A stretch of 45,919 nt of DNA from Octopus bimaculoides. Lineage: Eukaryota. The notes beneath the pieces were generated by a model. The model was not told the DNA's origin. It worked only from the letters and a program-made list of their open reading frames with translations, and did not search any database. A program made the position numbers and the translations under genes. The stretch spans positions 8,950,233-8,996,151 of the forward strand of contig NC_068986.1 of assembly GCF_001194135.2 (NCBI RefSeq), written 5' to 3'. The stretch's first letter is position 1. Each line of letters opens with the position of its first letter. Shown piece by piece: positions 7,952 to 45,919 of this stretch.

Positions 7952-8240
7952 TGGCATTCGTTGCTTACAGCGGAACAGCCTGCTTATGAAATTAAGTGGC
8001 CGAATACTCCTTAGACACGTGTACCATTAACGTAATTCTCAGTGAGATTCAGCTTGACGTTGCATGTAACAAAACTAGCCCTTCGAAATACAGGGGCTAC
8101 TCATTTTGGCCAGCTTAGTGGAATGGAGCAACGTGATAGAAAGTGCCTTGCTCCAAAAGACACAACGTCCCGCTGAGTATCGAACTCACGGTCTTACGAT
8201 TGTGAGCCGGCTACACCTAACCACTTACTCACACGCCTTC
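7952..8240 (-). mobile_element. Family C tRNA-head SINE, diverged
   Basis: Head GAAGGCGTGTG...GAGTTCGATAC, core TTGGAGCAAGGCAC; 3' part (GCAGGCTGTTCCG, GGTACACGTG) shared with 30646-30978. Confidence 0.75.
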
Positions 8241-9890: not shown

Positions 9891-9963
9891 CGGCAAGAAA
9901 CTATTCTACTGCACGCAATGATAAGATGTTGATGATAATAGTACTACTACTACTACTACTACT

Positions 9964-10140
9964 ATAGGCACAAGACCAGCAATTTTGGAGAAGGGATTAA
10001 GTCAATTACATCGACACCAGTACTCAACCAGTACTTATTTTATCGACACTAAAAACATGAAAGGCAAAGTCGGCGGAATTTGAACTCAGAACGTAAAGAC
10101 AGACGAAATACCTCTAAGCATTTTGTCTGACGCACTAACG
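9964..10140 (-). mobile_element. Family A SINE, head-truncated
   Basis: Clear body and tail match; tail side abuts (TAC)n, head side abuts (AAT)n. Confidence 0.85.
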
Positions 10141-10208: not shown

Positions 10209-10680
10209 TGGTGTAAAAGATGCGCTACAGCAAACATTCTACTCAATATTATAGACTTGCTTGTCAGTTGTTTGACTTTAACCAGTTGAGCATGTCCCTT
10301 AGTGGCTGATGATATGTACATCTCTGATCATGAGCAGAAGTAGTTGGGGAGCATCATAGCCATGTGTTGAGAGGAATTCTTTGGGGTTTGAATAATTCAC
10401 CTCTGGAAACATGGGTATTTCGTTCAACATCCTTAAACAACCCTTATTCAAGAACCGTTTGAGCGGGATGGGCTACTCGAACTGAGTAAAATTCTAACTG
10501 GGCCCCACCTACAATGTCATGCGCTGTTTATCTTGATATGAGATCACTATGTCGCGCACATATAGTTGTGATGCATGTGCCTGATGTACCCTTATCGGAT
10601 GGACTGTCATGATGGGTATATTGGGCTTCGTATATTTTACCCCAGTGTCACTTTGATGGCATGCGCTGCTCATTCAGTAA
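10209..10680. mobile_element. Unclassified dispersed repeat (family D)
   Basis: First ~125 bp recur, diverged, at 19179-19306; ends in an AAT-like remnant; no recognisable ORF. Confidence 0.6.
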
Positions 10681-10687
10681 TAATTAT

Positions 10688-11405
10688 AAAGCGTTAAGGA
10701 CTAACTACGTGAAGAACAAAATCGACAACATTACCGACAGCGACAAATACAGAATGTGTGGTGAGCAGGGTGAAAGGGTATGGCACATCGTTAGCAAATG
10801 CCCGAAATTGGCACAGCGCGAATACAAAACACGACATGACAATGTGGCAAGAATGATCCATTGGGAACGGCCTACAAAGAGCAAAGATGTAGTATGAGAA
10901 AACCCCAGAAGGAGTCACTGAGAATGAAGATTGCAAAATCCTGTGGGATGCAATGATCCAGTACGGTCACCTGACCAAACATCGGAAACCGGACATTGCT
11001 GTGGTGAATGAAAAAGAAAAAAACATGTATGATAATCAACATAGCAATGCCCCGGTTACAACAGGATCAATGTGAAAGACGAAGAAAAAATAAACAACTA
11101 CGACGATTTAAAATGGGAAATACGAAGGTTGTGGTCAACGAAGAGAGTCGATGTGATACCAATAGTAATTGGTGCACTTGGAAGTATCAGCACTCAACTA
11201 CCAACATAGCTGAAAAAGATCGGTGCAAGTGTGACGGTAGAACACCTACAAAAATCAGCATTGCTTGGAACTGCAAGAATTCTTCGCAGGGTTCTTGGAG
11301 CATGACCAGTAAAACAAGTGTCACCTTAACCTACCGGCTGTGGACAGCTGACACTTTTCATCACACTCAACAAAATAAGCTGCGACTTTTCATCAAATAA
11401 CAATA
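10688..11405 (+). mobile_element. R4/Dong-like RLE non-LTR retrotransposon, 5'-truncated and frameshifted
   Basis: ALRTNYVK...KYRMCGEQGERVWHIVSKCPKLAQREYKTRHDNVARMIHW (CCHC knuckle region), KILWD...RKPDIAVV (PD-(D/E)xK RLE), IPIVIGALG...LQKSALLGTARILRRVL then TGA at 11303; 3' UTR; AAT/AAC tail. Confidence 0.92.
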
Positions 11406-11433
11406 ATCGCGACAACAGCAACAACAACAATCA

Positions 11434-11645
11434 TTTCTGCCTTAGGCACAAGGCCTGAAATTTGATGGGAGAAGGATAGTCGATTATATCGACCCCAGTG
11501 TTTCACTGGTATTTAATTTATCGACCCCGAAAGGGTAAAAAGTAAAGTCGACTTCGGCGGAATTTGAACTCAGAACGTAGCAGTAGACGAAATACCGCTA
11601 AGCATTTCGCCCGGCGTCCTAATGATTCTGTCAGTTCGCCGTCTT
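11434..11645 (-). mobile_element. Family A SINE, full length
   Basis: Head through tail present; shares an (AAC/AAT) tract with the preceding LINE tail. Confidence 0.9.
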
Positions 11646-12772
11646 AACATCATCATCAACAACAACAACAACAACAATAATAATAATGATATATAATACC
11701 CAACCTGTACTTGAGAGGATATCTATAACATTGTTTTTAAAGAAGCAAAATCTGCTTAGTTAGTCTGAATGTGAGCTCAGGTAGAGTGAAATTCTAAGCA
11801 TTCAGTTATAGACTGCATGTTTGTTAGTTGTGAAGTTTGAATTGAAACTTCGATACAGCAAGACTAAATACATTTTTCTATTTTAAATTTATTCTCCATT
11901 GCTGCAGGGTATTACTCACGTGACATGTTAGTTATTTGGAGCGAGCCATGCTTTACCGTTTCTAAGCAATCGAACCGACTGAATTTCCTTCTTTTCATGT
12001 TTCTTTGCCAACAAAAATATGTACAATATTTAAAATCACCTTAGAGCTATATTAATTCAGATATTTCTTTAAGCAACATTGCATAATAACGAAGAAGCAT
12101 ATAAAGTCGGCATCTTTCAACGAATATTTCGTCATTCTTCTTTCCTAACAAAAGACCCGCAATCTTTTCAGTATCGCCCGGGGGGGGTTTCTAATTTCCG
12201 GTTCCTGTAAATGTATTTCAATAAAGTTTACTTACTGAGATATCAGCTTTGTGTGAATAATAAAAAAAGACACCAACCAAAAACAAAAAAAACAAAATAA
12301 AGCAAAAAACAACAACGACATCACAGGAAGACGAATGCCTCAGGGTAGATACACGACTATCATACAAAGAGGCGTGGAAGTGTGAGAAAGAGAAGCGTGT
12401 AAAGTACAACCAAAGTGTTTTTCTTGGAGAGAAACGATGAAGAAAATCCATGACGAAGCGATACCATAGAATACCATTCCTCTCCGAGAACTGCACTGTT
12501 TATGCCACATAGAGTGCCTGAAGAGGAACTACGGTAGCCAACAATTGACTAAATTGGGGACATCATACGTAATATGTAATGTGCAAATATGTAAACTATG
12601 GTGGACCGATACAATCCGAACTCGTAATTGATGAAGTGGTCAGATATGCCATGTTTTTTATAGATAATGTATGGTCGGTTGTCAGTGATAGAATATATAA
12701 GGGTTTTGCGTTGTTTACATTTGTCATCAGGTCCATCAACTTCAGCTAAATGATTATCTGTCAACTACAGTT

Positions 12773-16970: not shown

Positions 16971-17174
16971 AATTATGGAAAAAAGAAAACAGGTACAATA
17001 CTCATTTATTTTTATCAAAAAAATTAAACGTTACTATAATCAAAAGTTACTATATCTATGATGTTATTTATTATATCATAGTTATAAAAGGTGGCGAGCT
17101 GGCAGAAACGTTAGTTGTGTCCGACGCACCTGCGATTCTGCCAGCGCTCCCCCTTTATCAACAACAACTATATT

Positions 17175-17393
17175 CCTTTCTACTCTAGGCAGAAGGCCTG
17201 AAATCTTGGGGAAGGAGTTAAGTCGGTTACATCGACCCCAGTACTCAACTGGTACTTATTTCATCGACCCCGAAAGGATGAAAGGCAAAGTCGATCTCAG
17301 CAGCATTTGAACACAGAACGTAATGAATGGCGGACGAAAGGTAGCTAAAGTAATTTGCCAGACGCCATAACGATTTTGCCAGTTCGGCGCCTT
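17175..17393 (-). mobile_element. Family A SINE, full length
   Basis: Head-to-tail match. Confidence 0.9.
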
Positions 17394-17399
17394 AACGGC

Positions 17400-22480: not shown

Positions 22481-22859
22481 TTGTTCTCTCAAGAAACCAG
22501 AAATCCATTTCTTTTTAATACTGCTATAGCAATCAGTTAATAAAAATTACGATATTGTTGAAATAGTTATGTTGCACAGTATGTTGTAATGTCCTTGACA
22601 ATTATAAGTTCAAATCTCACAGAGATTGATGTTTCCTTTCATCCAGGAGTTTGATTCAAACGTTATAACCCTCAGTTACATTTGTTAGTCTTTAAAAAAA
22701 AGATAGAATCAATATTAACACAACGCCATGCTTCCTATTTTCTTTTCTTCCATCAATTCCTGATTAGCGGGAAAATTATAAACTCTGTTATTCATCACAG
22801 TTGAAGAAATAATAAAATTCAATTATAAACATCGTTTGTCTTTTGTTTGCTTCAATCAT

Positions 22860-23206
22860 TAGAGTGCTGCCATGCTGAGGCAACGCATTGGAGAAATTTT
22901 AGTCGAACGAATTTACTTTTTAAGTATTTAATCTTTAAGCCTAGTACTTATTCTATCGGTCACTTTTGCTGAACCGCTAGATAACGATATGTAAAATACC
23001 AACATCGGTTGTCAAGCAGCGATGGAGGAAAAAACACATGCACACACACGTATATACACATACACACAACAGGCTTCTTTCAGTTTCCGTTGACCGTATC
23101 CACTCACAAGAGACTATCGCGGAAAACCAAGGAGCCAAGCAGTGGGACAGAACCTGGAACCATGTGGTTGGGTAGCAAACTTCTTACAACGTATCCACGC
23201 CTGCGC
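22860..23206 (-). mobile_element. Family B composite SINE, diverged
   Basis: tRNA-like head, core, internal (TG)n and 3' module all present. Confidence 0.85.
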
Positions 23207-23594
23207 TCATTCATATTAATTTATATACATCTATATATTCATAATAATGATTATATATATGTATCTACATGTATCTACACACGCATACACGGTTTTCATG
23301 TTCTTATATCTTACTTCATTTACATTTTATATCTTATCATTTCTATTATATCTTTTTACTGTTTCTTATTTTTTATTATTTGTATTTTTGATATAAACAT
23401 GTACCCCATCCAAGTCTTATAAATCACTGTAAGCACGATTTCGTCTCTCGGACGTAAAGTACTGACAACTGAAAATTTTTATCTTCTACAAATAATTTTT
23501 ATTACTCCTTAGCTCATAAACGAGCACATAAAAAAAACCAGTTGTACTATACACGGAGTACTGTCTCCCTTAAAAATTCTTTTATATGTATATT

Positions 23595-23810
23595 TGTGTG
23601 TCTGTGTTTGTCCCCCACCCTGCCCAACATCGTTTGACAACCGATGTTGGTGTGTTTATGTCCCCGTAACTTAGCGGTTCGGCAAAAGAAACCGATAGAA
23701 TAAGTACTAAGCTTACAAAGAATAAGTCCTGGGGTCAATTTGTTCGACTAAAACCCCTTAAGGTGGTGCTCCAGCATGACCGCAGTCAAATGACTGGAAT
23801 AAAAGAATAA
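23595..23810 (+). mobile_element. Family B SINE 3' half
   Basis: Post-microsatellite module ending GCAGTCAAATGACTGGAATAAAAGAATAA. Confidence 0.88.
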
Positions 23811-24269: not shown

Positions 24270-24563
24270 TGTAAGTTTGCTTCCCAACCACATGATCCTG
24301 AGTTCAGTTCCACTGCGTGGTACCTTGAGCAAGCGTCTTCCTCGGGCCAACCAAAGCCTTGTGAGTGGATTTGGAAGACAGAAACTGAAAAAAGCCCGTC
24401 GTATATGTGTGTGTCCCACCGTTTGACAACTGATGTTGCTGTGTTTACATCCCCTTAATCTAGTGGTTCGGCAAAAAGGGCCGATAGAATAAGCACTAGG
24501 CTTTAAAAGAAAAAAAATGTACTCGAGTCGATTCGTTCTACAAGGTGGTGTTCCAACATGGCC
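24270..24563 (+). mobile_element. Family B SINE
   Basis: B-box GAGTTCAGTTCC, core ACCTTGAGCAAG, 3' module. Confidence 0.85.
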
Positions 24564-25629: not shown

Positions 25630-25925
25630 AGGGTGGCGCGTGTCCTAGTTGTTATAGCGCTGAGCTCACTCACGGTGATAACGTCATGGGTTCGATTCCT
25701 GGGCGGCCATGTAAAGAAATTGTATTCTTGAGCAAGGTATCGCATTTCACATTGCTCCTGTCAGCTCAACTGAAAGAACAGAAAATCCTGCTGGTGCAGC
25801 TCTCTTCTCTACCCACCCACTCGCCCCAGCCGTCTACATCTATTCACGACTCCACAGGCACTCACAAAAATTTACGAAAGTATGGTACGTGTCACCAGGT
25901 CATACTCGCTTGCAAGTGACGACCA
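25630..25925 (+). mobile_element. Family C-like SINE, diverged
   Basis: GGCGCGTGTCCTAGTTGTT head, GGGTTCGATTCC B-box, CTTGAGCAAGG core, TTTCACATTGCTCC. Confidence 0.65.
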
Positions 25926-26094
25926 CGTTTTTCTTTTTCCTCAATGCATATTACCGGAAACGTTAAGAAATCTGGTGCTTCAAAGAAAACAACTGCCGGC
26001 TGCAGCTTATTTTCAGGTAAATTAAATTAACATTTTATATATATTTATTCTTATTCAAATAGTTTGTCCTTTAATCATTTTTTTTATCTTCTTC

Positions 26095-26428
26095 TCGCTT
26101 CAGTCATTAGACTACGGCCATGCTGGGACACCGCACTGAAGAATTTTTTAATCGAATGAGTCGATCTCAGCACGTTTTTTTTAAGCTTAGCACTTATTCT
26201 ACCGGTTCTTTTGCCGAACCGTTAAATTATGGCTGTCAAACGGTGGTGGGGACAAGCGCGCGCGCACACATACACATGACGGGCTTCCTTCAGTTTCCGT
26301 CAACCAAATCCACTCACAAGGCTTTGATCAGCCTGAGGCTATAGTAGAAGACACTGGACCAAGGTGCAATGGTACTGAATCCGGAACCACGAGGTTGGGA
26401 AGCAAGCTTCTTGCTACACATCCATGCC
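26095..26428 (-). mobile_element. Family B SINE
   Basis: Full modular layout on the minus strand. Confidence 0.85.
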
Positions 26429-27134
26429 ATATATAAGTGCCAACGGACAAAACTCTCAGCCCTTAAGTCACTCTCTTGCTTCGGCAAACTATTCATAAAA
26501 AGATATACTTGNNNNNNNNNNATACTTGTATTCACGTATTGAGTTCTATTTTTTTCCCCTCTTTACATCACCATACCTCTCTCTCTCTCTCCCCCTCTCT
26601 CTCTCTCTCCCCCTCTCTCTCTCTCTCTCTCTCTCTAACAGAACGAAAAATAAACAAACAAAAAACGGCAGCAAATAAAATATCAGTAGAAATTATAGTA
26701 TTTTGTTTTGAAAGTTGGAAATTATAATAATTTATGAACCAAGCAGTCCGGTTGGCCGGCCGGCCGGCCAGCCAGCAAAGGAAACAACCAGGGGAGGAGA
26801 GAGAACCGAGGAAGTGGGGGAGGGAAGGCAATAGATGGAGGAGGAGGAGGAGTGATGTGGTAGCAGATGTAGAGCTAACAACGGAGACGATAAGAAGCTC
26901 AACGTGTCGACACACTTGAAGTAACGTGCCACACATGACTACACCTACTTGGGGCCTTTTAAGAGTTGTTATTAAAACGGAATTCCATTATCATCATCAT
27001 CCTCATCATCATCATCGTCGTTTTTGTTTAAGCGTATTTGAAAGAGAGGTGGGAGTGGGGAGTTGGGCGAGTAACGACTTATTTGCTCGTGATGTTAATA
27101 CAACGAAAATTAATAATTATAACAATAATAATCG

Positions 27135-27347
27135 TTTCTACTATAGGCACAAGGCCTGAAATTTTGAGGGAAGGGAACTAGTCGATTACATCGACCCCAG
27201 TGCGTCGCTGGTACTTAATTTATCGACCCCGAAAGGATGAAGGGCAAAGTCATCTTCGGCGGAATTTGAACTCGGAACGTAACGACAGACAAAATACCGC
27301 CAAGTATTTCGACCGGCGTGCTGACGATTCTGCCAATTCGCCGCCTT
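27135..27347 (-). mobile_element. Family A SINE, full length
   Basis: Head AAGGCGGCGAATTGGCAGAATCG through tail into (ATT)n. Confidence 0.92.
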
Positions 27348-27451
27348 AGGGTTCTTGAAGCATGACCAGTGAACGAGTGTCACCTTAGTCTGCCGGTTGT
27401 GGACAGCTGACACGTTCCATTATACCCAGCAAAATAAGCTGCAATGTTTTC

Positions 27452-27493: not shown

Positions 27494-27665
27494 AGGCGTA
27501 GGAGTGGCTGTGTGGTAAGTAGCTTGCTTACCAACCACATGGTCCCGGGTTCAGTCCCACTACGTGGCATCTTGGGCAAGTATCTTCTACTATAGCCTCG
27601 GGCCGACCAAAGCCTTGTGAGTGGATTTGGTAGACGGAAACTGAAAGAAGCCCGTCGTATATATG

Positions 27666-27714
<49 letters not shown>

Positions 27715-27923
27715 ATGTGTTTGTGTGTCTGTGTTTGTCCCTCCAACATCGCTTGACAATCGATGCTGGTGTGTTTATGTCCCCGTAACTTAGCGGTTCA
27801 ACAAAGAGACTGATAGAATAAGTACTAGGCTTCTAAAGAATAAGTCCTGGGGTAGATTTGCCCGACTAAAGGCGGTACTCCAGCATGGCCGCAGTCAAAA
27901 GACTGAAACAAGTAAAAGAGTAA
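27494..27923 (+). mobile_element. Family B composite SINE, full length, little diverged
   Basis: A-box-like TGGCTGTGTGG, B-box-like GGTTCAGTCCC, core CTTGGGCAAGT, internal (TA)/(TG) tract, tail GACTGAAACAAGTAAAAGA. Confidence 0.95.
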
Positions 27924-28810: not shown

Positions 28811-28981
28811 ATACTGGCTGTATGGTAAGAAGTTTGCTAGCCAACTACACGGTCCCGGGTTCAGTCCCATTGCGTGACACCTTAGGTAACTGTCTTCTAC
28901 TATAACCCCGGGTCGACCAAAGCCTTGTGAGTGGATTTGGTAGACGGAAACTGAAAGAAGCCCGCCGTATATCTATATACA

Positions 28982-29013
<32 letters not shown>

Positions 29014-29212
29014 TGTGCACCACCGCTTGGCAACCGGTGTTGGTATGTTTACATCCCTTGATTAGCAGTTCAGCAAAAGACCGATAGAATAAGTACCAGG
29101 TTTTTAAAATGTGAAGGGGATTAATCCATTCGTTCGACAAAACAAAGAAAACATTCTTCTAGGTGGTGCCCCAGCATGGTCGCAATCTAATGACCGAAAC
29201 AAGTGAAAGAAA
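28811..29212 (+). mobile_element. Family B SINE, full length
   Basis: All modules present. Confidence 0.9.
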
Positions 29213-29299
29213 AAAAAAAGAATACACACACACACACACTAATTATTTGCGTGTTAACAGTGGTTTGTTTTCGATTGCTGCAGAACACGTCCGTAGATT

Positions 29300-29916: not shown

Positions 29917-30128
29917 TATCTAAGCTGTGAGTTCGTTCGTTCTATTTTAGATAATAATGATTAATTCAAAGAAGGCAACCTTCGTCACGCTGGTTTGCTA
30001 AGAAAGAGTGAAATTTCTATAAAACATTCTCCGTTTTCTTCTATTCATTCAATATATCATTATTTCTACTACTTGACTTTCCGACCATACTTCAATGAAA
30101 ACAAAATAATAATAATAATAATAATAAT

Positions 30129-30307
30129 CCTTTCTATTATAGGCACCAGGCCAGAAAGTTCGGAGGAGGGGAACGGTCGATTACATCGACTCCAGTACTC
30201 GACTGGTATTTATTTCATCGACCGTGAAAGGGTGAAAGGCAAAGTCGACCTCGGCGGAATTTGAACTCGGAACGTAAAGACAAATGAAATGCCGCTGAGC
30301 ATTTTGG
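30129..30307 (-). mobile_element. Family A SINE, head-truncated
   Basis: Body and tail match; tail abuts (AAT)n. Confidence 0.88.
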
Positions 30308-33107: not shown

Positions 33108-33430
33108 CTTTCACTGTGGCCATGCTGGGGCACCATCTTGAAGAATTTTTAGTTGGATGAATCATCTTCAGCATTGATTTTTAAAAAAAAACCTAATACT
33201 TATTCTATCGGACTTCATTTGCCGAGCCGCTAAGTTACGGGCACGTAAACACACCAGTTGGCAAGTGGTGGTGGACACACACACACATACACACACGTAT
33301 GTATATGACAGGCTTCTCGTAGTTTCCGTCTATCAAATCCACTCACAAGGCTTTGCTCGGCCCGAGTTTATAGTAGAAGACACTTGCCAAAGGTGACACA
33401 CAGTAGGACTGAACCTGGAACCATGTGGTT
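33108..33430 (-). mobile_element. Family B SINE
   Basis: Core, internal (TG)n and 3' module. Confidence 0.85.
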
Positions 33431-34876: not shown

Positions 34877-35174
34877 AGGATGAAAGGCAAAGTCGACCTC
34901 GGCGGAATTTGAACTCAGAACGTAAAGACAGACGAAATACCTATTTCTTTATTGCCCACAAGGGGCTAAACATAGAGGGGACAAACAAGGACAGACAAAG
35001 GGATTAAGTCGATTACATCAACCCCAGTGCGTAACTGGTACTTAATTTATCGACCCCGAAAGGATGAAAGGCAAAGTCGACCTCGGCGGAATTTGAACTC
35101 AGAACGTAAAGACAGACGAAATACCGCTAAGCATTTCGCCCGGCGTGCCTAACGTTTCTGTCAGCTCGCCGCTT
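34877..35174 (-). mobile_element. Family A SINE variant with alternative tail plus partial tandem copy
   Basis: 34877-34941 is identical to 35061-35125; unique tail at 34942-35000. Confidence 0.88.
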
Positions 35175-35319
35175 TTGTTTAAGATATTATTAATGCTAGA
35201 ATTTGATTTCCAAGAAAAATCACGATTCTGTGAAACACTCAGCGCCCTCATAGCGTCGCTTGACATTTCTCGCCTGCATCTCTCAGCGCCCCCAATGGAA
35301 AGCGATGCTCAAATTAGAA

Positions 35320-37839: not shown

Positions 37840-39173
37840 AAATCTCTCCGAATGTCTCACCATGGTGTCCCTAACATCAAAAGTCATGTTTAACAACCAC
37901 AGATATACAATAAGAAATACAATTAAGGACAATATTCTTTTCCTTTTTTATTTTTATTTTTTGTCCTTGTCTGTTTGTCTTTGTTTTGCATGTCTTAATT
38001 ATTTTTACTTCGCACACAGACTCAGCTTCGTCCAAATAAAAGCATAAACATATACATTCATACAAACACATATAGATGCATGCATACACATACATTCAAA
38101 CGCACACACGTTCATGAATACATTTACCTATTATTGGAGCAACGTGATACATACCAACCCGTCTGGAGGAATATTTGGCTGAACTTGGGTTCTTGGGGAG
38201 AGAACGCAAATCCTTAATTCATACACTATAAATGATCACGATATCTGGAACTATAAAAATCTGCAAGACCTTTCTATGATTTAAAGAATGATGAACAAAC
38301 ACGAGGCTTTCCTTCACAACCTTGATATCAAGCAGGTGGCCTGTCAAAATTGATTCGAAGTTAAAAAGAGAAAGAGAACGAACGTACGTACGTACAAACG
38401 TACAGCGGGGACTAATTCTACACCATGCATTCATGCTTGTATCGAAGTTTTGGTTTTCTACATAGCGATTTTCAGCAGACGCTGTCATAGACTCTGTCTT
38501 TCCATTCAACAGCCACGACAGATGAAGTCCGCCATGTCCGGATTCCTAGCTACTAGTGTGAAAACAGGATGAAGAAATAGCTAATGTGTGTGTGTATGTG
38601 TTAAATAAATGACAAGACAGCTAGAAATTATGTAATGACTTTCATTAGCTTACCACTGTTTCTGCTATTAGATACATTGCACTCGTAGTTGAGTGCTTGG
38701 GTAGCATCTTATAGTTTTGTCGGAGTTTCAAAAAGTAAAATATTATATGGGAAAACATTTATATATATATATGGAAAATATCACCATCGAAAAAAACATA
38801 AAATTATGTAGGAAATGGAGAATGGGGTTTGAAGGATAAAACTCCCTCCTAGAAATATGTTGATAATATTTTGATAATTTTGTGTATATATGTGTATACA
38901 GATAGGTGTATGATGAACCCCCAAGTTGAACCTCACTAATCAGCAAGCCTAGGACGAGACAAGACGGAGTAACGGATTTTTGAGGTCAGAGAGGCCGAGA
39001 TCCCAGTGTATTACTGTTATCTCTGTAACTTCCAGTTACCAAAACCTAACTCAATGTTAACTTGGTTTCTTTATTACAAACTGCTAGTTGTGTGAAAGCA
39101 GTTTTACTGCATCACAAAATGAATAAATTAGATGAAAACGACGAAGAAAAACACACCTGATGATACATTTTAC

Positions 39174-39724
39174 GGATCTTTTTTAAAACGGGGGCCACAT
39201 TTTTCATTAATGTTTTACGTAGTGTTTTTGGTACCGAAAGACTTTCAAACTTCGTATACTTATCTATTTTGTGTTATAGAACAGAAAAATATTTTTGTAT
39301 TCGAATTTATTTCATGTAAAAAATTGTCTTATTTCGATAATTTCAACCAATCACTGACAAGTATTCAGTTGTTTACATTTACTCCTTGGCTGATTAAGCG
39401 ATGTAAAGTGTATTTAATCTCCATACCTTCGTTTTATTTGCTTTTTTCATTTTAAATTTGCTTTAACCCTAACCCTAAAGTTAGGGTTAGGGTTAGAGTT
39501 AATTGTTTCAGAATCGTTTGTTTATGTAGTCGGCACTTAATGTATATCGGCTGAATGGACGTCAGTCATTGGTTGAAATTACAGAAATACGACAACTTTA
39601 ACATGGAATAATTTATGGATTTCTTCTTTTTTTTTAAGAAGACTAAGAGAAAAAGATGTTTTATATGACACATTCTACCAGTGTTCCAAGTTTCAAAGTG
39701 TTTCGTTAATGAAAAATGTGGCCC
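39174..39724 (+). mobile_element. Non-autonomous DNA transposon (MITE) with TIRs and telomeric-repeat core, superfamily unassigned
   Basis: Left TIR GGATCTTTTTTAAAACGGGGGCCACATTTTTCATTAA (39174-39210); 19-bp inverse at 39706-39724; inner IR 39339-58/39561-80; TAACCCTAACCCTAA-AG-TTAGGGTTAGGGTTA at 39464-95. Confidence 0.85.
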
Positions 39725-40042
39725 ATCCCATTTTACTGGTAAATTATCACATAAACGTTACAAAGAAATAACAATCATTTAATTTACCGTTTAACATTTA
39801 CTGGAAAACCACTTCCAAACCTAGAGCTATGCTTCCAAATGCGATCTAAATGGAAATTAAGTCCTACTCAGGAAAGCAACATCCAGAAAGAGATGTCGCT
39901 CTCGCGTTATCTTGTAGAGCATCTCAGTGACTAGTCGTGAGGTTCGGAGCAGAAAGGATGTTTCTCGAGAGTTAGTGGCCATTCTTGTTAGTAATCCTCT
40001 AATTAATATATGGAGTTTTAGTTGTTACACAAACGCTCATAG

Positions 40043-40155
40043 TGAAGGCGCGTGGTCCAGGGAGTTGCTCTCACGATCATCAGATCGTAGGTTCGATCCC
40101 CAGACCGGACAGTGTATTATGTTCTCGAGCAAAACACTTCATTTCACATTGCTCA
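40043..40155 (+). mobile_element. Family C SINE head and core fragment
   Basis: GAAGGCGCGTGGTCC, GGTTCGATCCCC, CTCGAGCAAAACAC, TTTCACATTGCTC. Confidence 0.75.
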
Positions 40156-40326
40156 AATGCTGTGTGAGGACCGGCGTGTCAAAGAATGGACCCAACGTTT
40201 GCTTTATGTATCGTAAAAGGCGACTGAAAGAGGTTGAGGTAGGATTTGCACTTCCCAACCTCGGAAAACCCTCACCAGTAATGACAACCCAAAATCAGAC
40301 CCATGGTTGGTGGGTCATCGCCTGAG

Positions 40327-40667
40327 GGATCTTTTTTAAAACGGGGGCCACATTTTTCATTAACGAAACACTTTGAAACTTGGAACACTGGTAGAATGTC
40401 ATATAAAACATCTTTTTCTCTTAGTCTTCTTAAAAAAAAAAGAAATCCATAAATTATTCCATGTTAAAGTTGTCGTATTTCTGTAATTTCAACCAATCAC
40501 TGACGTCCATTCAGCCGATATACATTAAGTGCCGACTACATAAACAAACGATTCTGAAACAATTAACCCTAACCCTACGGTTAGGGTTAGGGTTAAAGCA
40601 AATTTAAAATGAAAAAAGCAAATAAAACGAAGGTATGGAGATTAAATACGCTTTACACCGCTTAATC
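40327..40667 (-). mobile_element. Second copy of the same MITE, inverted, truncated by a gap
   Basis: Reverse complement of 39392-39724 with only a handful of differences; carries the full 37-bp TIR at 40327-40363. Confidence 0.9.
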
Positions 40668-41159
40668 NNNNNNNNNNNNNNNNNNNNNNNNNNNNNNNNN
40701 NNNNNNNNNNNNNNNNNNNNNNNNNNNNNNNNNNNNNNNNNNNNNNNNNNNNNNNNNNNNNNNNNNNNNNNNNNNNNNNNNNNNNNNNNNNNNNNNNNNN
40801 NNNNNNNNNNNNNNNNNNNNNNNNNNNNNNNNNNNNNNNNNNNNNNNNNNNNNNNNNNNNNNNNNNNNNNNNNNNNNNNNNNNNNNNNNNNNNNNNNNNN
40901 NNNNNNNNNNNNNNNNNNNNNNNNNNNNNNNNNNNNNNNNNNNNNNNNNNNNNNNNNNNNNNNNNNNNNNNNNNNNNNNNNNNNNNNNNNNNNNNNNNNN
41001 NNNNNNNNNNNNNNNNNNNNNNNNNNNNCCCCCCCCCCCGTACTAATACTACTGCTTTTTTATTAACTGAGTCTATCCCTCTCCAACTCTGACTTTAGAC
41101 GATTTCTTTCAGAAGACAGAAAAAGTACAGACAGCAAGGAATCGGATCCAGGGCAAAAC

Positions 41160-41228
41160 CGGTACTTTACTTATCGACCACCGAAAGGATGAAAGACAAA
41201 GTGGACCTCAGCGTGACTTGAATTCAGT
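41160..41228 (-). mobile_element. Family A SINE remnant
   Basis: GGTACTTTACTTATCGACC...GAAAGGATGAAAGACAAAGTGGACCTC. Confidence 0.65.
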
Positions 41229-41420
41229 GGGTAGACAACCGGAACAACCACCGTTCCGTCCTACGATCTAACGACTGCCATACAGAGCTTATACAGAGAG
41301 AGAGGGGGAGAGGGGGAGAGAGAGAAAGAGAGAGAGAGACAGAGAGAGAAACAGAGAGAGAGAAACACAGAGAGAGAAACACAGAGAGAAACACAGAGAC
41401 AGAGAGAGAGAGAGCGAGAG

Positions 41421-41597
41421 TCCACCATTTGACAACCGGTGTAGCTGTGTTTACGTTCCCGAAACTTAGCGGTTCGGCAAAATATACCGATAGAATAAGT
41501 ACCAGGCTTACAAAAAATAAGTACGAGTACATTCGACAAAAAATTCTTCAATGCGGTGCTCCAGTATGGCCACAGTCTAATGACTGGAACAAGAGAA
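41421..41597 (+). mobile_element. Family B SINE 3' half
   Basis: CCACCATTTGACAACCGGTG...CTTAGCGGTTCGGC...ACAGTCTAATGACTGGAACAAG. Confidence 0.85.
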
Positions 41598-43589
41598 GGA
41601 CAGAAGCTCTGTTTACTCAGGCCATTCTATTATATGTATGCTACCTCTTTACACGTTTGGTCTTGCTGCCTTTTCTTTTCTTCTTTTTTTTCTTTTAAAT
41701 AATTCCTGAATATACATATGAAAATGCCGAAACCTAGAGATGCAGCCACATAAGTGATTTATAGATACAGGCAGGGTCACAAACCCACTTCATAAAGAAA
41801 TACGAACGTAGCCATGTAGCCATGTATGATAAATCTCTGCCTGGGTGTATAACGCGTAGAAATGAGAGGAATAAGAGAGAGGAGATTAAATGGAGAGGAA
41901 TAGGAAGAGGATAAAGAAAATAATTTTTAAAAAAAAGGACAAGAGGAAAAAATAAAGTTAAATGGTGGCGGATGGAGGTGTTTTAACACACTGTGTTTGT
42001 ATACACAGACACACACATATATATAAATATACATACACATACAAATGTGCATGCACATATATATATACACACACAATTCATGCCCCCCCCCCACACACAC
42101 ACACAAGCATACATACACACACAAATAAACATACATATATATATATATATATATATACATACATATATATAAATATGCATACACATATATACACAAATAC
42201 ATTCATGCCCACACACACACACACACAAATATACATACACACACACACACACAAATATACATACACACACACACANNNNNNNNNNNNNNNNNNNNNNNNN
42301 NNNNNNNNNNNNNNNNNNNNNNNNNNNNNNNNNNNNNNNNNNNNNNNNNNNNNNNNNNNNNNNNNNNNNNNNNNNNNNNNNNNNNNNNNNNNNNNNNNNN
42401 NNNNNNNNNNNNNNNNNNNNNNNNNNNNNNNNNNNNNNNNNNNNNNNNNNNNNNNNNNNNNNNNNNNNNNNNNNNNNNNNNNNNNNNNNNNNNNNNNNNN
42501 NNNNNNNNNNNNNNNNNNNNNNNNNNNNNNNNNNNNNNNNNNNNNNNNNNNNNNNNNNNNNNNNNNNNNNNNNNNNNNNNNNNNNNNNNNNNNNNNNNNN
42601 NNNNNNNNNNNNNNNNNNNNNNNNNNNNNNNNCTCAATAAGTTAGAACCATTTCAGACAAGAAGAGTAAAAATAAAAAAAAATGTACAGAGAAGAAAACT
42701 AATAAATTTTGTCAATAAAGTCTTTTATATAAATAAACATAAATAAATAAATAAGCGTAAAAAAACCCCACCCAGCTCTTTATTGTTGGGTGTTGGTAAG
42801 CAATGGGTCAGTGTTGATTTGCCCCTCACCGTTTCATGATTGTTGTCTGGTCATAAAAGCTTGTCTTACAGCACAGGCGAAATGGTTGCAACGACTGCAG
42901 CAGGCAGCCTTTCCACCTACCATCATCATCATCATCATTATTATTATTATTATTATTACACAAACGCGTTCTTAGAATAAATATCACACACTCAACGATG
43001 TATGAGTATGCAGTTGTGTGTGTGTGTGTATGTGTGAGGAAGAGAAGGGTTGGTGTTCTGAGTGTGTGTGTGTAGGTATATTTTCGTTCCTTTCATTCTC
43101 AACCTCAATGGTTGGTTATCTCTATTTCCATCACAGACGACAGCCACGACATTATTAAACCCCGATTCCAACGTCAAACTAAATTTCTCTCAAATGAGAA
43201 AAGTTAAGGTTAAGGTAACCTCGTTCACGTTTCAGTTTCGCCATTTTTTTCTTTACCAGCACCATCACCATCATCGTCAACTTCTTAGCAAGTCTGACAA
43301 TAGTAGAGTAAATTAACTTGCTCAAGGACACACATCTGATCGATGTTACTGATAACGTTCAGGTGTACCTAAAATGTGCGTGTGTATGTGGCGGGGGGGA
43401 GGGGGTCTTGCGTGTTTTGTGTGTGTGTAAATGTTTATATAAATATTTGTGTATATGCACACGTGAATCTATGTGCAAATATATACGTGTGTATACAAAT
43501 GTATGTATGTGCATGCATATGTACGTAATAACACACACACACACACACACATACATACATACATAAACCCACTGACACACACATACACA

Positions 43590-43652
<63 letters not shown>

Positions 43653-43995
43653 AAATTCTCATATTAGTATGTAGACCGAAACTGTTACAGTTTGGAAAAG
43701 AGAAACTTACGTTCATGCTCTCCGCAAGCGATTTGACATTAAATCAATTAATGAGAAATCCTTCCCCACCCCTACTCCACAATAACATTTTAGGATAAAC
43801 AATATATGTTCACAAATTCAGAATAATAATAAAATAGGGTTGATAACATAAAGTACCAGTTATACACTAGGGTCAATATAAATCAATAAAGCCACCATCA
43901 CATTGCCAGTGGAGGAAAACATCCCAATGCACTCTTTTGCCTCTACAGTCATACTTGCGCTTATACTCCGTTTGTTCTAGTGTACTGCACTCACT

Positions 43996-44187
43996 AAGGC
44001 GGCGAACTGGCAGAAACGTTAGCATGCCGGGCGAAATGCTTAGCGGTAATTCGTCTGTCTTTACGTTCTGAGTTCAAATTCCGCTGAGGTCGACTTTGCC
44101 TTACATCCTTTCGAGGTCGATAAATTAAGTACCAGTTGTGTACTGGGTCAAATTTCGGGCATTGTGCCTAGAGTAGAAAAGTATTCC
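43996..44187 (+). mobile_element. Family A SINE with 9-bp target-site duplication
   Basis: GCACTCACT at 43987-43995 and 44188-44196 flanks the copy; internal deletion of the hairpin module. Confidence 0.92.
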
Positions 44188-44872: not shown

Positions 44873-45175
44873 AGGAGTGGCTGTGTGGTAAGCAGTTTGC
44901 TCCCCAACCACGTGCTTCCGGGTTCAGTCCCACTGCGTGGCACCTTGAGCAAGTGTCTTCTAGGGCCGACCATAGCCGTGTGAGTGGGCTTGGTAGACGG
45001 AAACTGATACTGGTGTTTTTACGTCCCTGTGAGTTAGCAGTTCGGCAAAAAAGACCGACAGAAAAAGTACCAGGCTTAAAAAAATAAGAACCGGGGTCGA
45101 TTTATTCGACTAAAAAAATTCCAGGCGGTGCCCCAGCATGGCCGCAGTCTAATTACTAAAACAAAAGTTAAAAGA
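44873..45175 (+). mobile_element. Family B SINE lacking the internal microsatellite
   Basis: Head and core joined directly to the 3' module (ACGGAAACTGA-TACTGGTGT). Confidence 0.9.
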
Positions 45176-45919
45176 AATACAAAAATAAACGTATGTATGT
45201 ATGTATGTATGTCCATGTTTCCGTATATGCACGCCAGAAGTGTGCAATATACTGATTGAAAGACACAGCAAATCACAGTTAGAATACCTGCAGACATGCA
45301 ATTTAATCTGCATAACCGTTACTGCTGTAGCAAATATATTGCCAGACAGACACAGGAAAAATAACAACAATACACACACACACACACATATATATATACA
45401 AAAAGAACTGTGTATATGTATAAACGAAGAGCAACATAAAACCATGGAAAACAATGATAAAAAGCCAAGTGGGCAAAGCTAAGATCGTAAAACTAGAAGC
45501 AAGTGCAACATTGTTGCAGTTGCTAGGTATTACTTTACTGTGAAACAAGCGAGAGGCAGACGACAAGCTTGTTTGGCTCTCCCACCTTTTATCAAAAAAA
45601 TCTAGTGAATATTAAATGCAACAGTAACCTTTTTCACATGAACCTACAATACAGAAATTAAAACTATGTAAATGTGTGGGACAATATGCATGCGCGCGCG
45701 CGTGCTTGTGTGTGTGTGTGTGTGTGTGTGTGTATGAAAAGAGCACATTTACACTATTTGTGTGTCATATATATATAGATATTTGATGGCTATTTTTTCT
45801 TTGAAGGGCGGGAAAAAAAACTCTGAAAAAAAACTCTGAAATCTTATGACGATAACATTAGCAATAAAAACTATAACCATCACAATAAACAATATCATCA
45901 ATATATATATATATATATA

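What the first reader, a model, noticed from the sequence alone, without database searches (positions are those of the whole stretch)
39174..40667. Two near-identical MITE copies form a long inverted repeat around a 600-bp spacer
Seen: 40327-40667 is the reverse complement of about 39392-39724 with only a handful of substitutions and small indels. The arms are at least 330 bp and the spacer (39725-40326) contains a SINE C head and unique DNA. Copy 2 has an intact outer TIR where copy 1 is degenerate, so they are not simple duplicates. Established: DNA transposons hop locally; coleoids have extensive ADAR editing of dsRNA. Inference: a local hop created (a) a perfect-duplex editing or small-RNA substrate if transcribed and (b) a potential composite transposon able to move the spacer using the outer ends.
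Basis: partly seen in the sequence, partly recalled or inferred. Interest (0 to 1): 0.7.

Follow-up and report, generated by a model that had tools for sequence, protein, structure and literature searches.

The report
Two inverted MITE copies, ordinary repeat
Two copies of one small non-coding DNA transposon lie head to head about 600 bases apart in repeat-rich, apparently non-coding DNA, forming a long inverted repeat that is real in the assembly but ordinary, with no evidence here for RNA editing, small RNAs or movement as a unit.

Summary
39392-39724 is the reverse complement of 40345-40667: 317 of 333 columns identical, 6 substitutions, 3 small indels, E about 4e-151.

Copy 1 is a complete 555-bp element (39174-39728). 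It has a 37-nt terminal inverted repeat starting GGATC and an exact 8-bp target-site duplication, CATTTTAC. Its right end carries a clean 14-nt internal deletion. Copy 2 starts at 40327 with the intact 37-nt end and runs into an assembly gap at 40668, so its outer end is unknown.

The element is itself a foldback (z = -12.9), AT-rich and non-coding. Its centre is a palindrome of telomere-like hexamers. The 8-bp duplication, GG terminus and 37-nt repeat fit the published Merlin definition better than hAT, but no transposase partner could be sought.

The composite-transposon idea is weakened. Copy 1 has its own duplication, so the pair arose in place; one inner end is damaged and the second outer end is unseen.

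No other copy was found in the window, metagenome contigs, prokaryotic genomes or the protein collection. Verdict: an ordinary inverted transposon pair, low interest.

The parts
39166..39173 (.). Left copy of the 8-bp target-site duplication, CATTTTAC
   Evidence: Identical 8-mer at 39729-39736. Empirical chance of such an 8-mer recurring in a 40-nt zone is 0.0045; with the adjoining 4-nt inverted terminus it is 3.8e-5.
39174..39728 (+). MITE copy 1, complete, 555 bp, 30.8% G+C, non-coding, itself a foldback
   Evidence: Bounded by TIRs and TSD. As a single strand it folds to -176.1 kcal/mol against -105.0 +/- 5.5 for shuffles, z = -12.9. G+C. No Pfam hit or protein homologue.
39174..39210 (+). 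Left 37-nt terminal inverted repeat of copy 1, GGATCTTTTTTAAAACGGGGGCCACATTTTTCATTAA
   Evidence: 100% identical (37/37) to 40327-40363. Its inner 19 nt are the exact reverse complement of 39706-39724.
39304..39358 (.). Subterminal box of the left half; inverted partner at 39561-39614, and 40451-40504 in copy 2
   Evidence: About 55 nt at 84-85% identity between the halves, core AATTTCAACCAATCACTGAC.
39463..39495 (.). Central palindrome of telomere-like hexamers, (CCCTAA)2-AG-(TTAGGG)2
   Evidence: Inverted repeat I7. TTAGGGTTAGGG occurs only inside the two copies: 5 matches against 0.04 expected.
39706..39728 (-). Right TIR of copy 1, with a 14-nt internal deletion; reads GGAT|GGGCCACATTTTTCATTAA on the minus strand
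   Evidence: Alignment to copy 2's intact end and direct reading.
39729..39736 (.). Right copy of the 8-bp target-site duplication, CATTTTAC
39392..39728 (+). Left arm of the long inverted repeat (right part of copy 1)
39729..40326 (.). Spacer, 598 bp, 42.8% G+C, unique within the window
   Evidence: Only a self-hit in the window. No protein-level match. G+C.
40070..40154 (+). Diverged SINE-like head inside the spacer, with B-box-like GGTTCGATCCC at 40090-40100
   Evidence: Local alignment scores of 36-43 to 25669-25757(+) and 8126-8206(-), against shuffles of 18.4 +/- 2.5 with a maximum of 30. Not called as a tRNA.
40327..40363 (+). Intact 37-nt TIR of copy 2; the end that corresponds to copy 1's damaged right end, facing the spacer
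   Evidence: 37/37 identical to 39174-39210.
40327..40667 (-). MITE copy 2, inverted relative to copy 1; 341 bp are seen and the rest is lost in the gap. This is the right arm of the inverted repeat.
40668..41028 (.). Assembly gap of 361 N that hides the remainder of copy 2 (about 214 bp expected) and its outer end and TSD
   Evidence: No TIR remnant or TSD directly right of the gap.

Best explanation
Two separate insertions of one family of non-autonomous cut-and-paste DNA transposon (a foldback-type MITE) lie in opposite orientation 598 bp apart in repeat-rich DNA with no detectable coding sequence. The element is about 555 bp long, with 37-nt GG-terminal inverted repeats and an 8-bp target-site duplication. 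The pair therefore forms a passive long inverted repeat of at least 333 bp.

Shown: the element's anatomy, the boundaries, the TSD of copy 1 and the distinctness of the copies.

Inferred: a transposase supplied in trans made both insertions, and the structural features fit a Merlin-type enzyme best. The 14-nt deletion in copy 1's right end arose after insertion. The locus has no dedicated function. If it lies inside a transcribed intron, its RNA would fold arm to arm and would be an ordinary repeat-derived ADAR or Dicer substrate, like many other nearby inverted repeat pairs.
For: - Inverted match of 333 columns at 95.2% identity, E = 3.8e-151.
- Similarity ends exactly at the same terminal GGATC at two independent junctions.
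- Exact 8-bp TSD around copy 1, plus a retained GGAT terminus; empirical p = 3.8e-5.
- Foldback structure of the single element, z = -12.9.
- No coding capacity or protein relatives.
- The TIR length, GG terminus and 8-bp TSD match the published definition of Merlin elements: TIRs of 24-462 bp, a conserved terminal 5'-GG and 8-9-bp TSDs (PMC8101967).
- DNA transposons are very abundant in cephalopod genomes; the giant squid has 1.6 million copies (PMC6962438).
- Across metazoans, including an octopus, young repeats with a nearby inverted copy are the usual source of edited dsRNA (PMC9989829). The arrangement therefore needs no special explanation.
Against: - Only two copies were seen, so the multi-copy nature of the family, the consensus TIR and the generality of the 8-bp TSD rest on a single complete copy.
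- Copy 2 lies at a contig edge next to a gap in a short-read-style assembly with 12 gaps in 46 kb. Its interior could be a graph path mixed from other family members.
- The superfamily is assigned from structure alone, with no transposase partner.
- No read data could be consulted.
Confidence: 0.75

Rival explanations
1. Assembly artefact. Copy 2, or its orientation or interior sequence, is not real. The contig end at 40667 is a de Bruijn-graph walk from the spacer into k-mers shared with the reverse complement of copy 1 or with other family members, or it is a haplotype chimera.
For: Copy 2 ends exactly at an N gap. The window has 12 gaps and 4620 N. The arms share perfect runs of up to 69 bp, longer than many assembly k-mers. 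A C homopolymer sits at the other gap edge.
Against: Both copies and the unique spacer lie in one uninterrupted 4609-bp contig. Copy 2 differs from copy 1 by 6 substitutions and 3 indels, and it carries the intact 37-nt end that copy 1's corresponding end lacks, so it is not a retrace of copy 1. The spacer|TIR junction at 40326|40327 lies in unique sequence.
Confidence: 0.12
2. Functional hairpin-RNA locus. The pair is co-transcribed, forms a duplex of about 330 bp and is hyper-edited by ADAR and/or diced into small RNAs, with a regulatory or transposon-silencing role.
For: The predicted MFE fold of 39174-40667 pairs the arms almost end to end, at -711.6 kcal/mol. Young repeats with nearby inverted copies are the main A-to-I targets across metazoans, including an octopus (PMC9989829). 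Long inverted repeats can give hpRNAs and siRNAs (PMC8728187).
Against: There is no evidence of transcription and no gene or exon signal nearby. Such a fold is a property of any inverted repeat pair. LIRBase lists millions of long inverted repeats and notes that an inverted repeat is not necessarily transcribed.
Confidence: 0.08
3. Composite (macro)transposon. The outer ends of the two copies are used together to move the spacer.
For: Nearby elements of one family can act as one macrotransposon or undergo alternative transposition in maize Ac/Ds (PMC9910405; PMC4270019). The left outer end (39174-39210) is intact. Copy 1's own right end is damaged, which would favour pairing with a more distant end.
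Against: Copy 1 is flanked by its own 8-bp TSD, so the arrangement was assembled in place and did not arrive as a unit. The second outer end is in the gap and unseen. No second copy of the spacer was found in the window or the protein collection. No active transposase is known here.
Confidence: 0.03
4. Inverted segmental duplication (for example replication template switching) rather than transposition.
For: High identity, close spacing and inverted orientation.
Against: Homology stops precisely at the element's terminal base on the only visible side (40327). The duplicated end is more complete than its supposed template. Copy 1 has a TSD.
Confidence: 0.02

Closest known systems
Merlin-superfamily MITEs (non-autonomous relatives of IS1016/IS1595-like DDE transposons)
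   Same: 8-bp TSD, a TIR that starts with 5'-GG, and a 37-nt TIR that falls within the published 24-462 bp range (PMC8101967); small and non-coding.
   Different: No transposase partner sharing these TIRs was found or could be searched for. The assignment rests on one TSD and one family-defining dinucleotide.
hAT-superfamily MITEs
   Same: 8-bp TSD and a size of a few hundred bp (for example hAT1_NA and hAT2_NA, PMC3845634).
   Different: The hAT MITE termini listed there begin CAGTG or CGGTG and are about 14 nt long. Here the terminus is GGATC and the TIR is 37 nt.
Inverted Alu pairs and other nearby inverted repeat pairs that form ADAR-edited dsRNA
   Same: Two young copies of one repeat family in opposite orientation within about 1 kb, predicted to form a long intramolecular duplex (PMC9989829).
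   Different: Transcription and editing are not shown here. The element is a DNA transposon, not a SINE.
Ac/Ds macrotransposons and alternative transposition in maize
   Same: Two nearby elements of one family whose termini could in principle be used together (PMC9910405; PMC4270019).
   Different: There is no evidence of mobilisation, the second outer terminus is unseen, and copy 1 has its own TSD.
Foldback elements and palindromic MITEs
   Same: The single element folds into one long imperfect hairpin (z = -12.9), with matching TIR, subterminal box and central palindrome in both halves.
   Different: The arms are much diverged between these blocks. The centre is a telomere-hexamer palindrome, for which I found no described parallel.

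Membership tests
MITE (non-autonomous TIR DNA transposon) | Terminal inverted repeats | tested here: met
   The 37-nt end at 39174-39210 recurs inverted at 39706-39728 (19 nt exact, plus the terminal GGAT after a 14-nt deletion). It is complete at the corresponding end of copy 2, 40327-40363.
MITE (non-autonomous TIR DNA transposon) | Target-site duplication directly flanking the element | tested here: met
   CATTTTAC at 39166-39173 and 39729-39736; empirical p = 0.0045 alone and 3.8e-5 with the terminus. Copy 2 cannot be tested because of the gap.
MITE (non-autonomous TIR DNA transposon) | Small size, A+T-rich, no coding capacity | tested here: met
   555 bp, 30.8% G+C against 37.6% for the window. 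The longest ORF that overlaps the element is 107 aa and starts outside it. A concatenate of the element's longest stop-free translations found no protein relative.
MITE (non-autonomous TIR DNA transposon) | Many homogeneous copies in the genome | tested here: inconclusive
   Only two copies in 46 kb. The host genome is not searchable with these tools. Metagenome, prokaryote-genome and protein searches gave nothing beyond chance 19-25-mers.
Merlin superfamily | 8- or 9-bp TSD | tested here: met
   8 bp; definition from PMC8101967.
Merlin superfamily | TIRs of 24-462 bp with a conserved terminal 5'-GG | tested here: met
   37-nt TIR beginning GGATC; definition.
Merlin superfamily | Autonomous partner encoding a DDE_Tnp_IS1595 transposase with the same termini | not testable with these tools
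   No transposase in the window, and the host genome is not available.
hAT superfamily | 8-bp TSD | tested here: met
hAT superfamily | Short TIRs with a CAG/TAG-type terminus (YARNG from my own knowledge; CAGTG/CGGTG in PMC3845634) | tested here: not met
   The terminus is GGATC and the TIR is 37 nt; comparison.
Hairpin-RNA / ADAR substrate locus | Inverted arms able to form a long intramolecular duplex | tested here: met
   The MFE structure pairs 39392-39728 with 40327-40667, at -711.6 kcal/mol.
Hairpin-RNA / ADAR substrate locus | Both arms on one transcript; clustered A-to-G mismatches or 21-23-nt small RNAs | not testable with these tools
Composite / macrotransposon | Two intact outward-facing termini | tested here: inconclusive
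   The left outer end is intact (39174-39210). The right outer end lies in the gap at 40668-41028.
Composite / macrotransposon | TSD around the whole unit, or further copies of the spacer flanked by the same ends | tested here: inconclusive
   The TSD brackets copy 1 alone. The spacer is unique in the window and absent from the protein collection. The host genome was not searchable.

The most novel reading that the evidence does not exclude
The pair is a transcribed long-hairpin locus whose duplex of about 330 bp is hyper-edited or diced into small RNAs that act in trans on other copies of this MITE family. In addition, the family's central head-to-head telomere-hexamer palindrome would mark an unusual origin or an unusual interaction with telomere-binding factors.
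Probability: 0.07. Interest if true: 0.45.

Novelty: new member of a known kind. Interest (0 to 1): 0.15.

Why it matters
It matters little as it stands. Nearby inverted copies of young repeats are the standard source of edited dsRNA in animals, and long inverted repeats are counted in the millions across eukaryote genomes. One more such pair, in DNA with no detectable gene, changes nothing. It offers three modest uses:
- a cleanly delimited, possibly Merlin-type foldback MITE for repeat annotation of this genome;
- a convenient test locus, with a near-perfect 330-bp duplex and a unique loop, if someone wants to measure repeat-derived editing or endo-siRNA production in this animal;
- a warning that the contig edge at 40667 sits inside a repeat.

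Tried and rejected
- Other copies of the element in public DNA: a metagenome scan with the 19-nt TIR core gave six loci that match only the 19-25-mer, which is chance. A scan of prokaryotic genome contigs with the 20-nt subterminal box gave none.
- Reaching other copies, or other assemblies of this locus, through spurious ORFs: exact look-ups of the 132-aa spacer ORF and the 107-aa ORF failed. Protein searches failed with concatenated MITE translations and with spacer plus junction-spanning ORFs. The third protein search was not spent.
- Coding context: Pfam on ten of the longest N-free ORFs gave nothing meaningful.
- tRNA or SINE identity of the spacer head: ARAGORN and Rfam gave nothing; only weak local similarity to two other places was found.
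- Literature on telomere-repeat palindromes inside MITEs: nothing relevant was found.
- Rejected: segmental inverted duplication, because the boundaries coincide with the TIR terminus.
- Rejected: a hAT assignment from the TSD alone, because the terminus does not fit.
- Rejected: the mir-297 hit at 38053-38123, which scores 37 bits against a gathering score of 90 in low-complexity sequence.

Full report

Yes. Reading 38900-41300 and running the repeat finder shows inverted matches that tile 39392-39724 against 40345-40667. They are split only by small indels. BLASTN joins them into one alignment of 333 columns: 95.2% identity, 6 mismatches, 3 gap openings, E = 3.8e-151 (alignment).

A global alignment places the six substitutions at 39401, 39409, 39479-39481 and 39567. 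The indels are 6, 2 and 2 nt. The perfect runs are 69, 69, 57, 55 and 41 bp. At substitution level the arms are 98.1% alike.

In a self-comparison of the whole window, every other repeat pair is 65-92% identical. This is therefore the youngest, or most homogenised, repeat pair in the 46 kb. No third copy exists in the window.

**2. Anatomy**

*Left boundary.* It is fixed by two independent junctions. The same 37 nt, GGATCTTTTTTAAAACGGGGGCCACATTTTTCATTAA, start at 39174 and at 40327 (37/37 identical, family D4). They are preceded by unrelated sequence in each case.

*Copy 1's right end.* The inner 19 nt of this repeat recur inverted at 39706-39724, followed by ATCC (39725-39728), the complement of the terminal GGAT. 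Against copy 2, this end lacks exactly 14 nt of the repeat. It is the same end with one internal deletion, not a diffusely degenerate one.

*Target-site duplication.* The 8 nt immediately outside both ends are CATTTTAC (39166-39173 and 39729-39736). I took 319,000 random positions in this microsatellite-rich window as a null. An 8-mer recurs in a 40-nt zone at the right distance with p = 0.0045. It recurs together with the 4-nt inverted terminus with p = 3.8e-5.

*Copy 1* is therefore a complete 555-bp element (39174-39728) with a target-site duplication. It is 30.8% G+C, against 37.6% for the window. The longest ORF overlapping it is 107 aa and starts outside it. A protein search with a concatenate of its longest stop-free translations found nothing.

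*Foldback structure.* The element is itself a foldback. The TIRs, a subterminal box of about 55 nt (39304-39358 against 39561-39614, 84%) and a central palindrome all pair. The single strand folds to -176.1 kcal/mol, against -105.0 +/- 5.5 for shuffles, z = -12.9.

*Centre.* The centre is (CCCTAA)2-AG-(TTAGGG)2, a head-to-head palindrome of the metazoan telomere hexamer. TTAGGGTTAGGG occurs five times in the window, all inside the two copies, against 0.04 expected.

*Copy 2* (40327-40667) is inverted relative to copy 1. Its visible 341 nt correspond to copy 1's right 337 nt. It then runs into the 361-N gap at 40668-41028. About 214 nt of a full-length copy, its outer TIR and its TSD are therefore unseen. 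Nothing right of the gap resembles them.

*Spacer.* It is 598 bp (39729-40326), 42.8% G+C, and unique in the window. Its stretch 40070-40154 includes GGTTCGATCCC and is about 70% similar to 25669-25757(+) and 8126-8206(-). The scores are 36-43, against 18.4 +/- 2.5 for shuffles. That gives weak support for a diverged SINE-like head. ARAGORN and Rfam do not call a tRNA there.

**3. What it is**

The features define a MITE: TIRs, a TSD, small size, A+T richness, no coding capacity and a hairpin-prone structure.

*Superfamily.* An 8-bp TSD is shared by several superfamilies.
- The hAT MITEs tabulated in PMC3845634 have termini of about 14 nt that begin CAGTG or CGGTG. This element does not fit that.
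- Merlin elements are defined by TIRs of 24-462 bp with a conserved terminal 5'-GG and by 8-9-bp TSDs (PMC8101967). All three features are met.
- I therefore call the element Merlin-like on structure. This is a lead, not a membership: it rests on one TSD, and no transposase partner could be sought.

*Origin of the pair.*
- Homology stops exactly at the element terminus at 40327.
- Copy 2's end is more complete than copy 1's corresponding end.
- Copy 1 has its own TSD.

These three points argue for two transposition events and against an inverted segmental duplication. They also show that the pair was assembled in place and did not arrive as one composite unit.

*Local hop or independent insertions?* This cannot be decided without the family's copy number and consensus. 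DNA transposons are extremely numerous in cephalopod genomes; PMC6962438 reports 1.6 million in the giant squid. For a family with thousands of copies, chance neighbours are expected.

**4. How it most likely works**

Most likely it does nothing in particular. It is a passive long inverted repeat. If a transcript spans 39174-40667, the predicted minimum-energy fold pairs the arms almost end to end, at -711.6 kcal/mol, out-competing each element's own foldback. Such RNA would be a generic ADAR or Dicer substrate.

This is exactly the class reported as the main target of A-to-I editing across metazoans, an octopus included: evolutionarily young repeats with a nearby inverted copy (PMC9989829). 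Long inverted repeats number in the millions in eukaryote genomes and are not necessarily transcribed (PMC8728187).

I found no sign of a gene nearby. The window's ORFs are low-complexity or repeat-derived, and ten of the longest have no Pfam match of note.

**5. The composite-transposon idea**

Use of termini from two nearby elements is well documented for maize Ac/Ds (PMC9910405; PMC4270019), so the idea is mechanistically legitimate. Here the left outer end is intact. Copy 1's own right end is damaged, which would if anything favour a distant partner.

Against it:
- The needed second outer end is in the gap.
- The TSD brackets copy 1 alone.
- The spacer was found nowhere else.
- No transposase source is known.

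I give it about 3%.

**6. Artefact risk**

The window has 12 gaps and 4620 N, typical of a short-read scaffold, and copy 2 sits at a contig edge. Perfect shared runs of up to 69 bp mean that a de Bruijn walk through copy 2 could borrow k-mers from other family members.

On the other side, both copies and the unique spacer lie in one gap-free 4609-bp contig. Copy 2 also differs from copy 1 in ways a retrace would not produce, notably the intact TIR and the indels.

I consider the presence of an inverted MITE end at 40327 robust. The interior of copy 2 is less certain. I put about 12% on a material artefact.

**7. Searches that led nowhere**

- The metagenome scan with the TIR core returned only chance 19-25-mers.
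- The prokaryotic genome scan returned nothing.
- Two exact ORF look-ups and two protein searches with element, spacer and junction translations returned nothing.
- The literature searches found no description of a telomere-hexamer palindrome at the centre of a MITE.

**8. Verdict**

The functional parts are untested, and the composite reading is weakened. This is a new instance of a well-known kind of feature. Interest is low (0.15).

Noticed in passing
39463-39495 and 40563-40595: The centre of each MITE copy is a head-to-head palindrome of the telomere hexamer, (CCCTAA)2-loop-(TTAGGG)2. All five TTAGGGTTAGGG-like matches in the window lie inside the two copies, against 0.04 expected. I found no explanation and no literature parallel.
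   Followed up: partly
38053-38123 (-): Rfam mir-297 match at 37 bits, far below the gathering score of 90, in low-complexity sequence. Almost certainly not a microRNA.
   Followed up: no
whole window; gaps at 753, 1285, 3025, 4355, 12817, 26512, 30979, 34386, 35700, 40668, 42276, 44365: There are twelve N gaps totalling 4620 bases in 45.9 kb. Many are bordered by microsatellites, and a run of 11 C sits at 41029-41039 directly after the gap beside copy 2. This is a fragmented short-read-style assembly, so repeat structure at contig edges should be treated with caution.
   Followed up: partly
e.g. 2552-2712, 9959-10140, 11420-11646, 17163-17394, 27107-27349, 30117-30306, 34998-35178, 43994-44147; and 22835-23206, 23593-23810, 24273-24563, 26077-26428, 27499-27923, 28815-29219, 33109-33430, 41422-41600, 44873-45184: At least two abundant interspersed repeat families (SINE-like) fill the window with copies 65-92% identical, in both orientations. 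Several lie within a few hundred bases of an inverted partner, so diverged inverted repeat pairs are common here.
   Followed up: no
10661-11400 (+): Two ORFs in different frames (78 and 130 aa) look, from my own knowledge of such tails, like a frameshifted C-terminal remnant of a LINE-type retrotransposon. Pfam gave no match.
   Followed up: partly
39174-39210 and 40327-40363: The two intact 37-nt ends are in direct orientation 1153 bp apart and 100% identical. Copy 1's own right end has lost 14 nt. The only inverted partner still available for the intact left end would be the unseen end in the gap.
   Followed up: no
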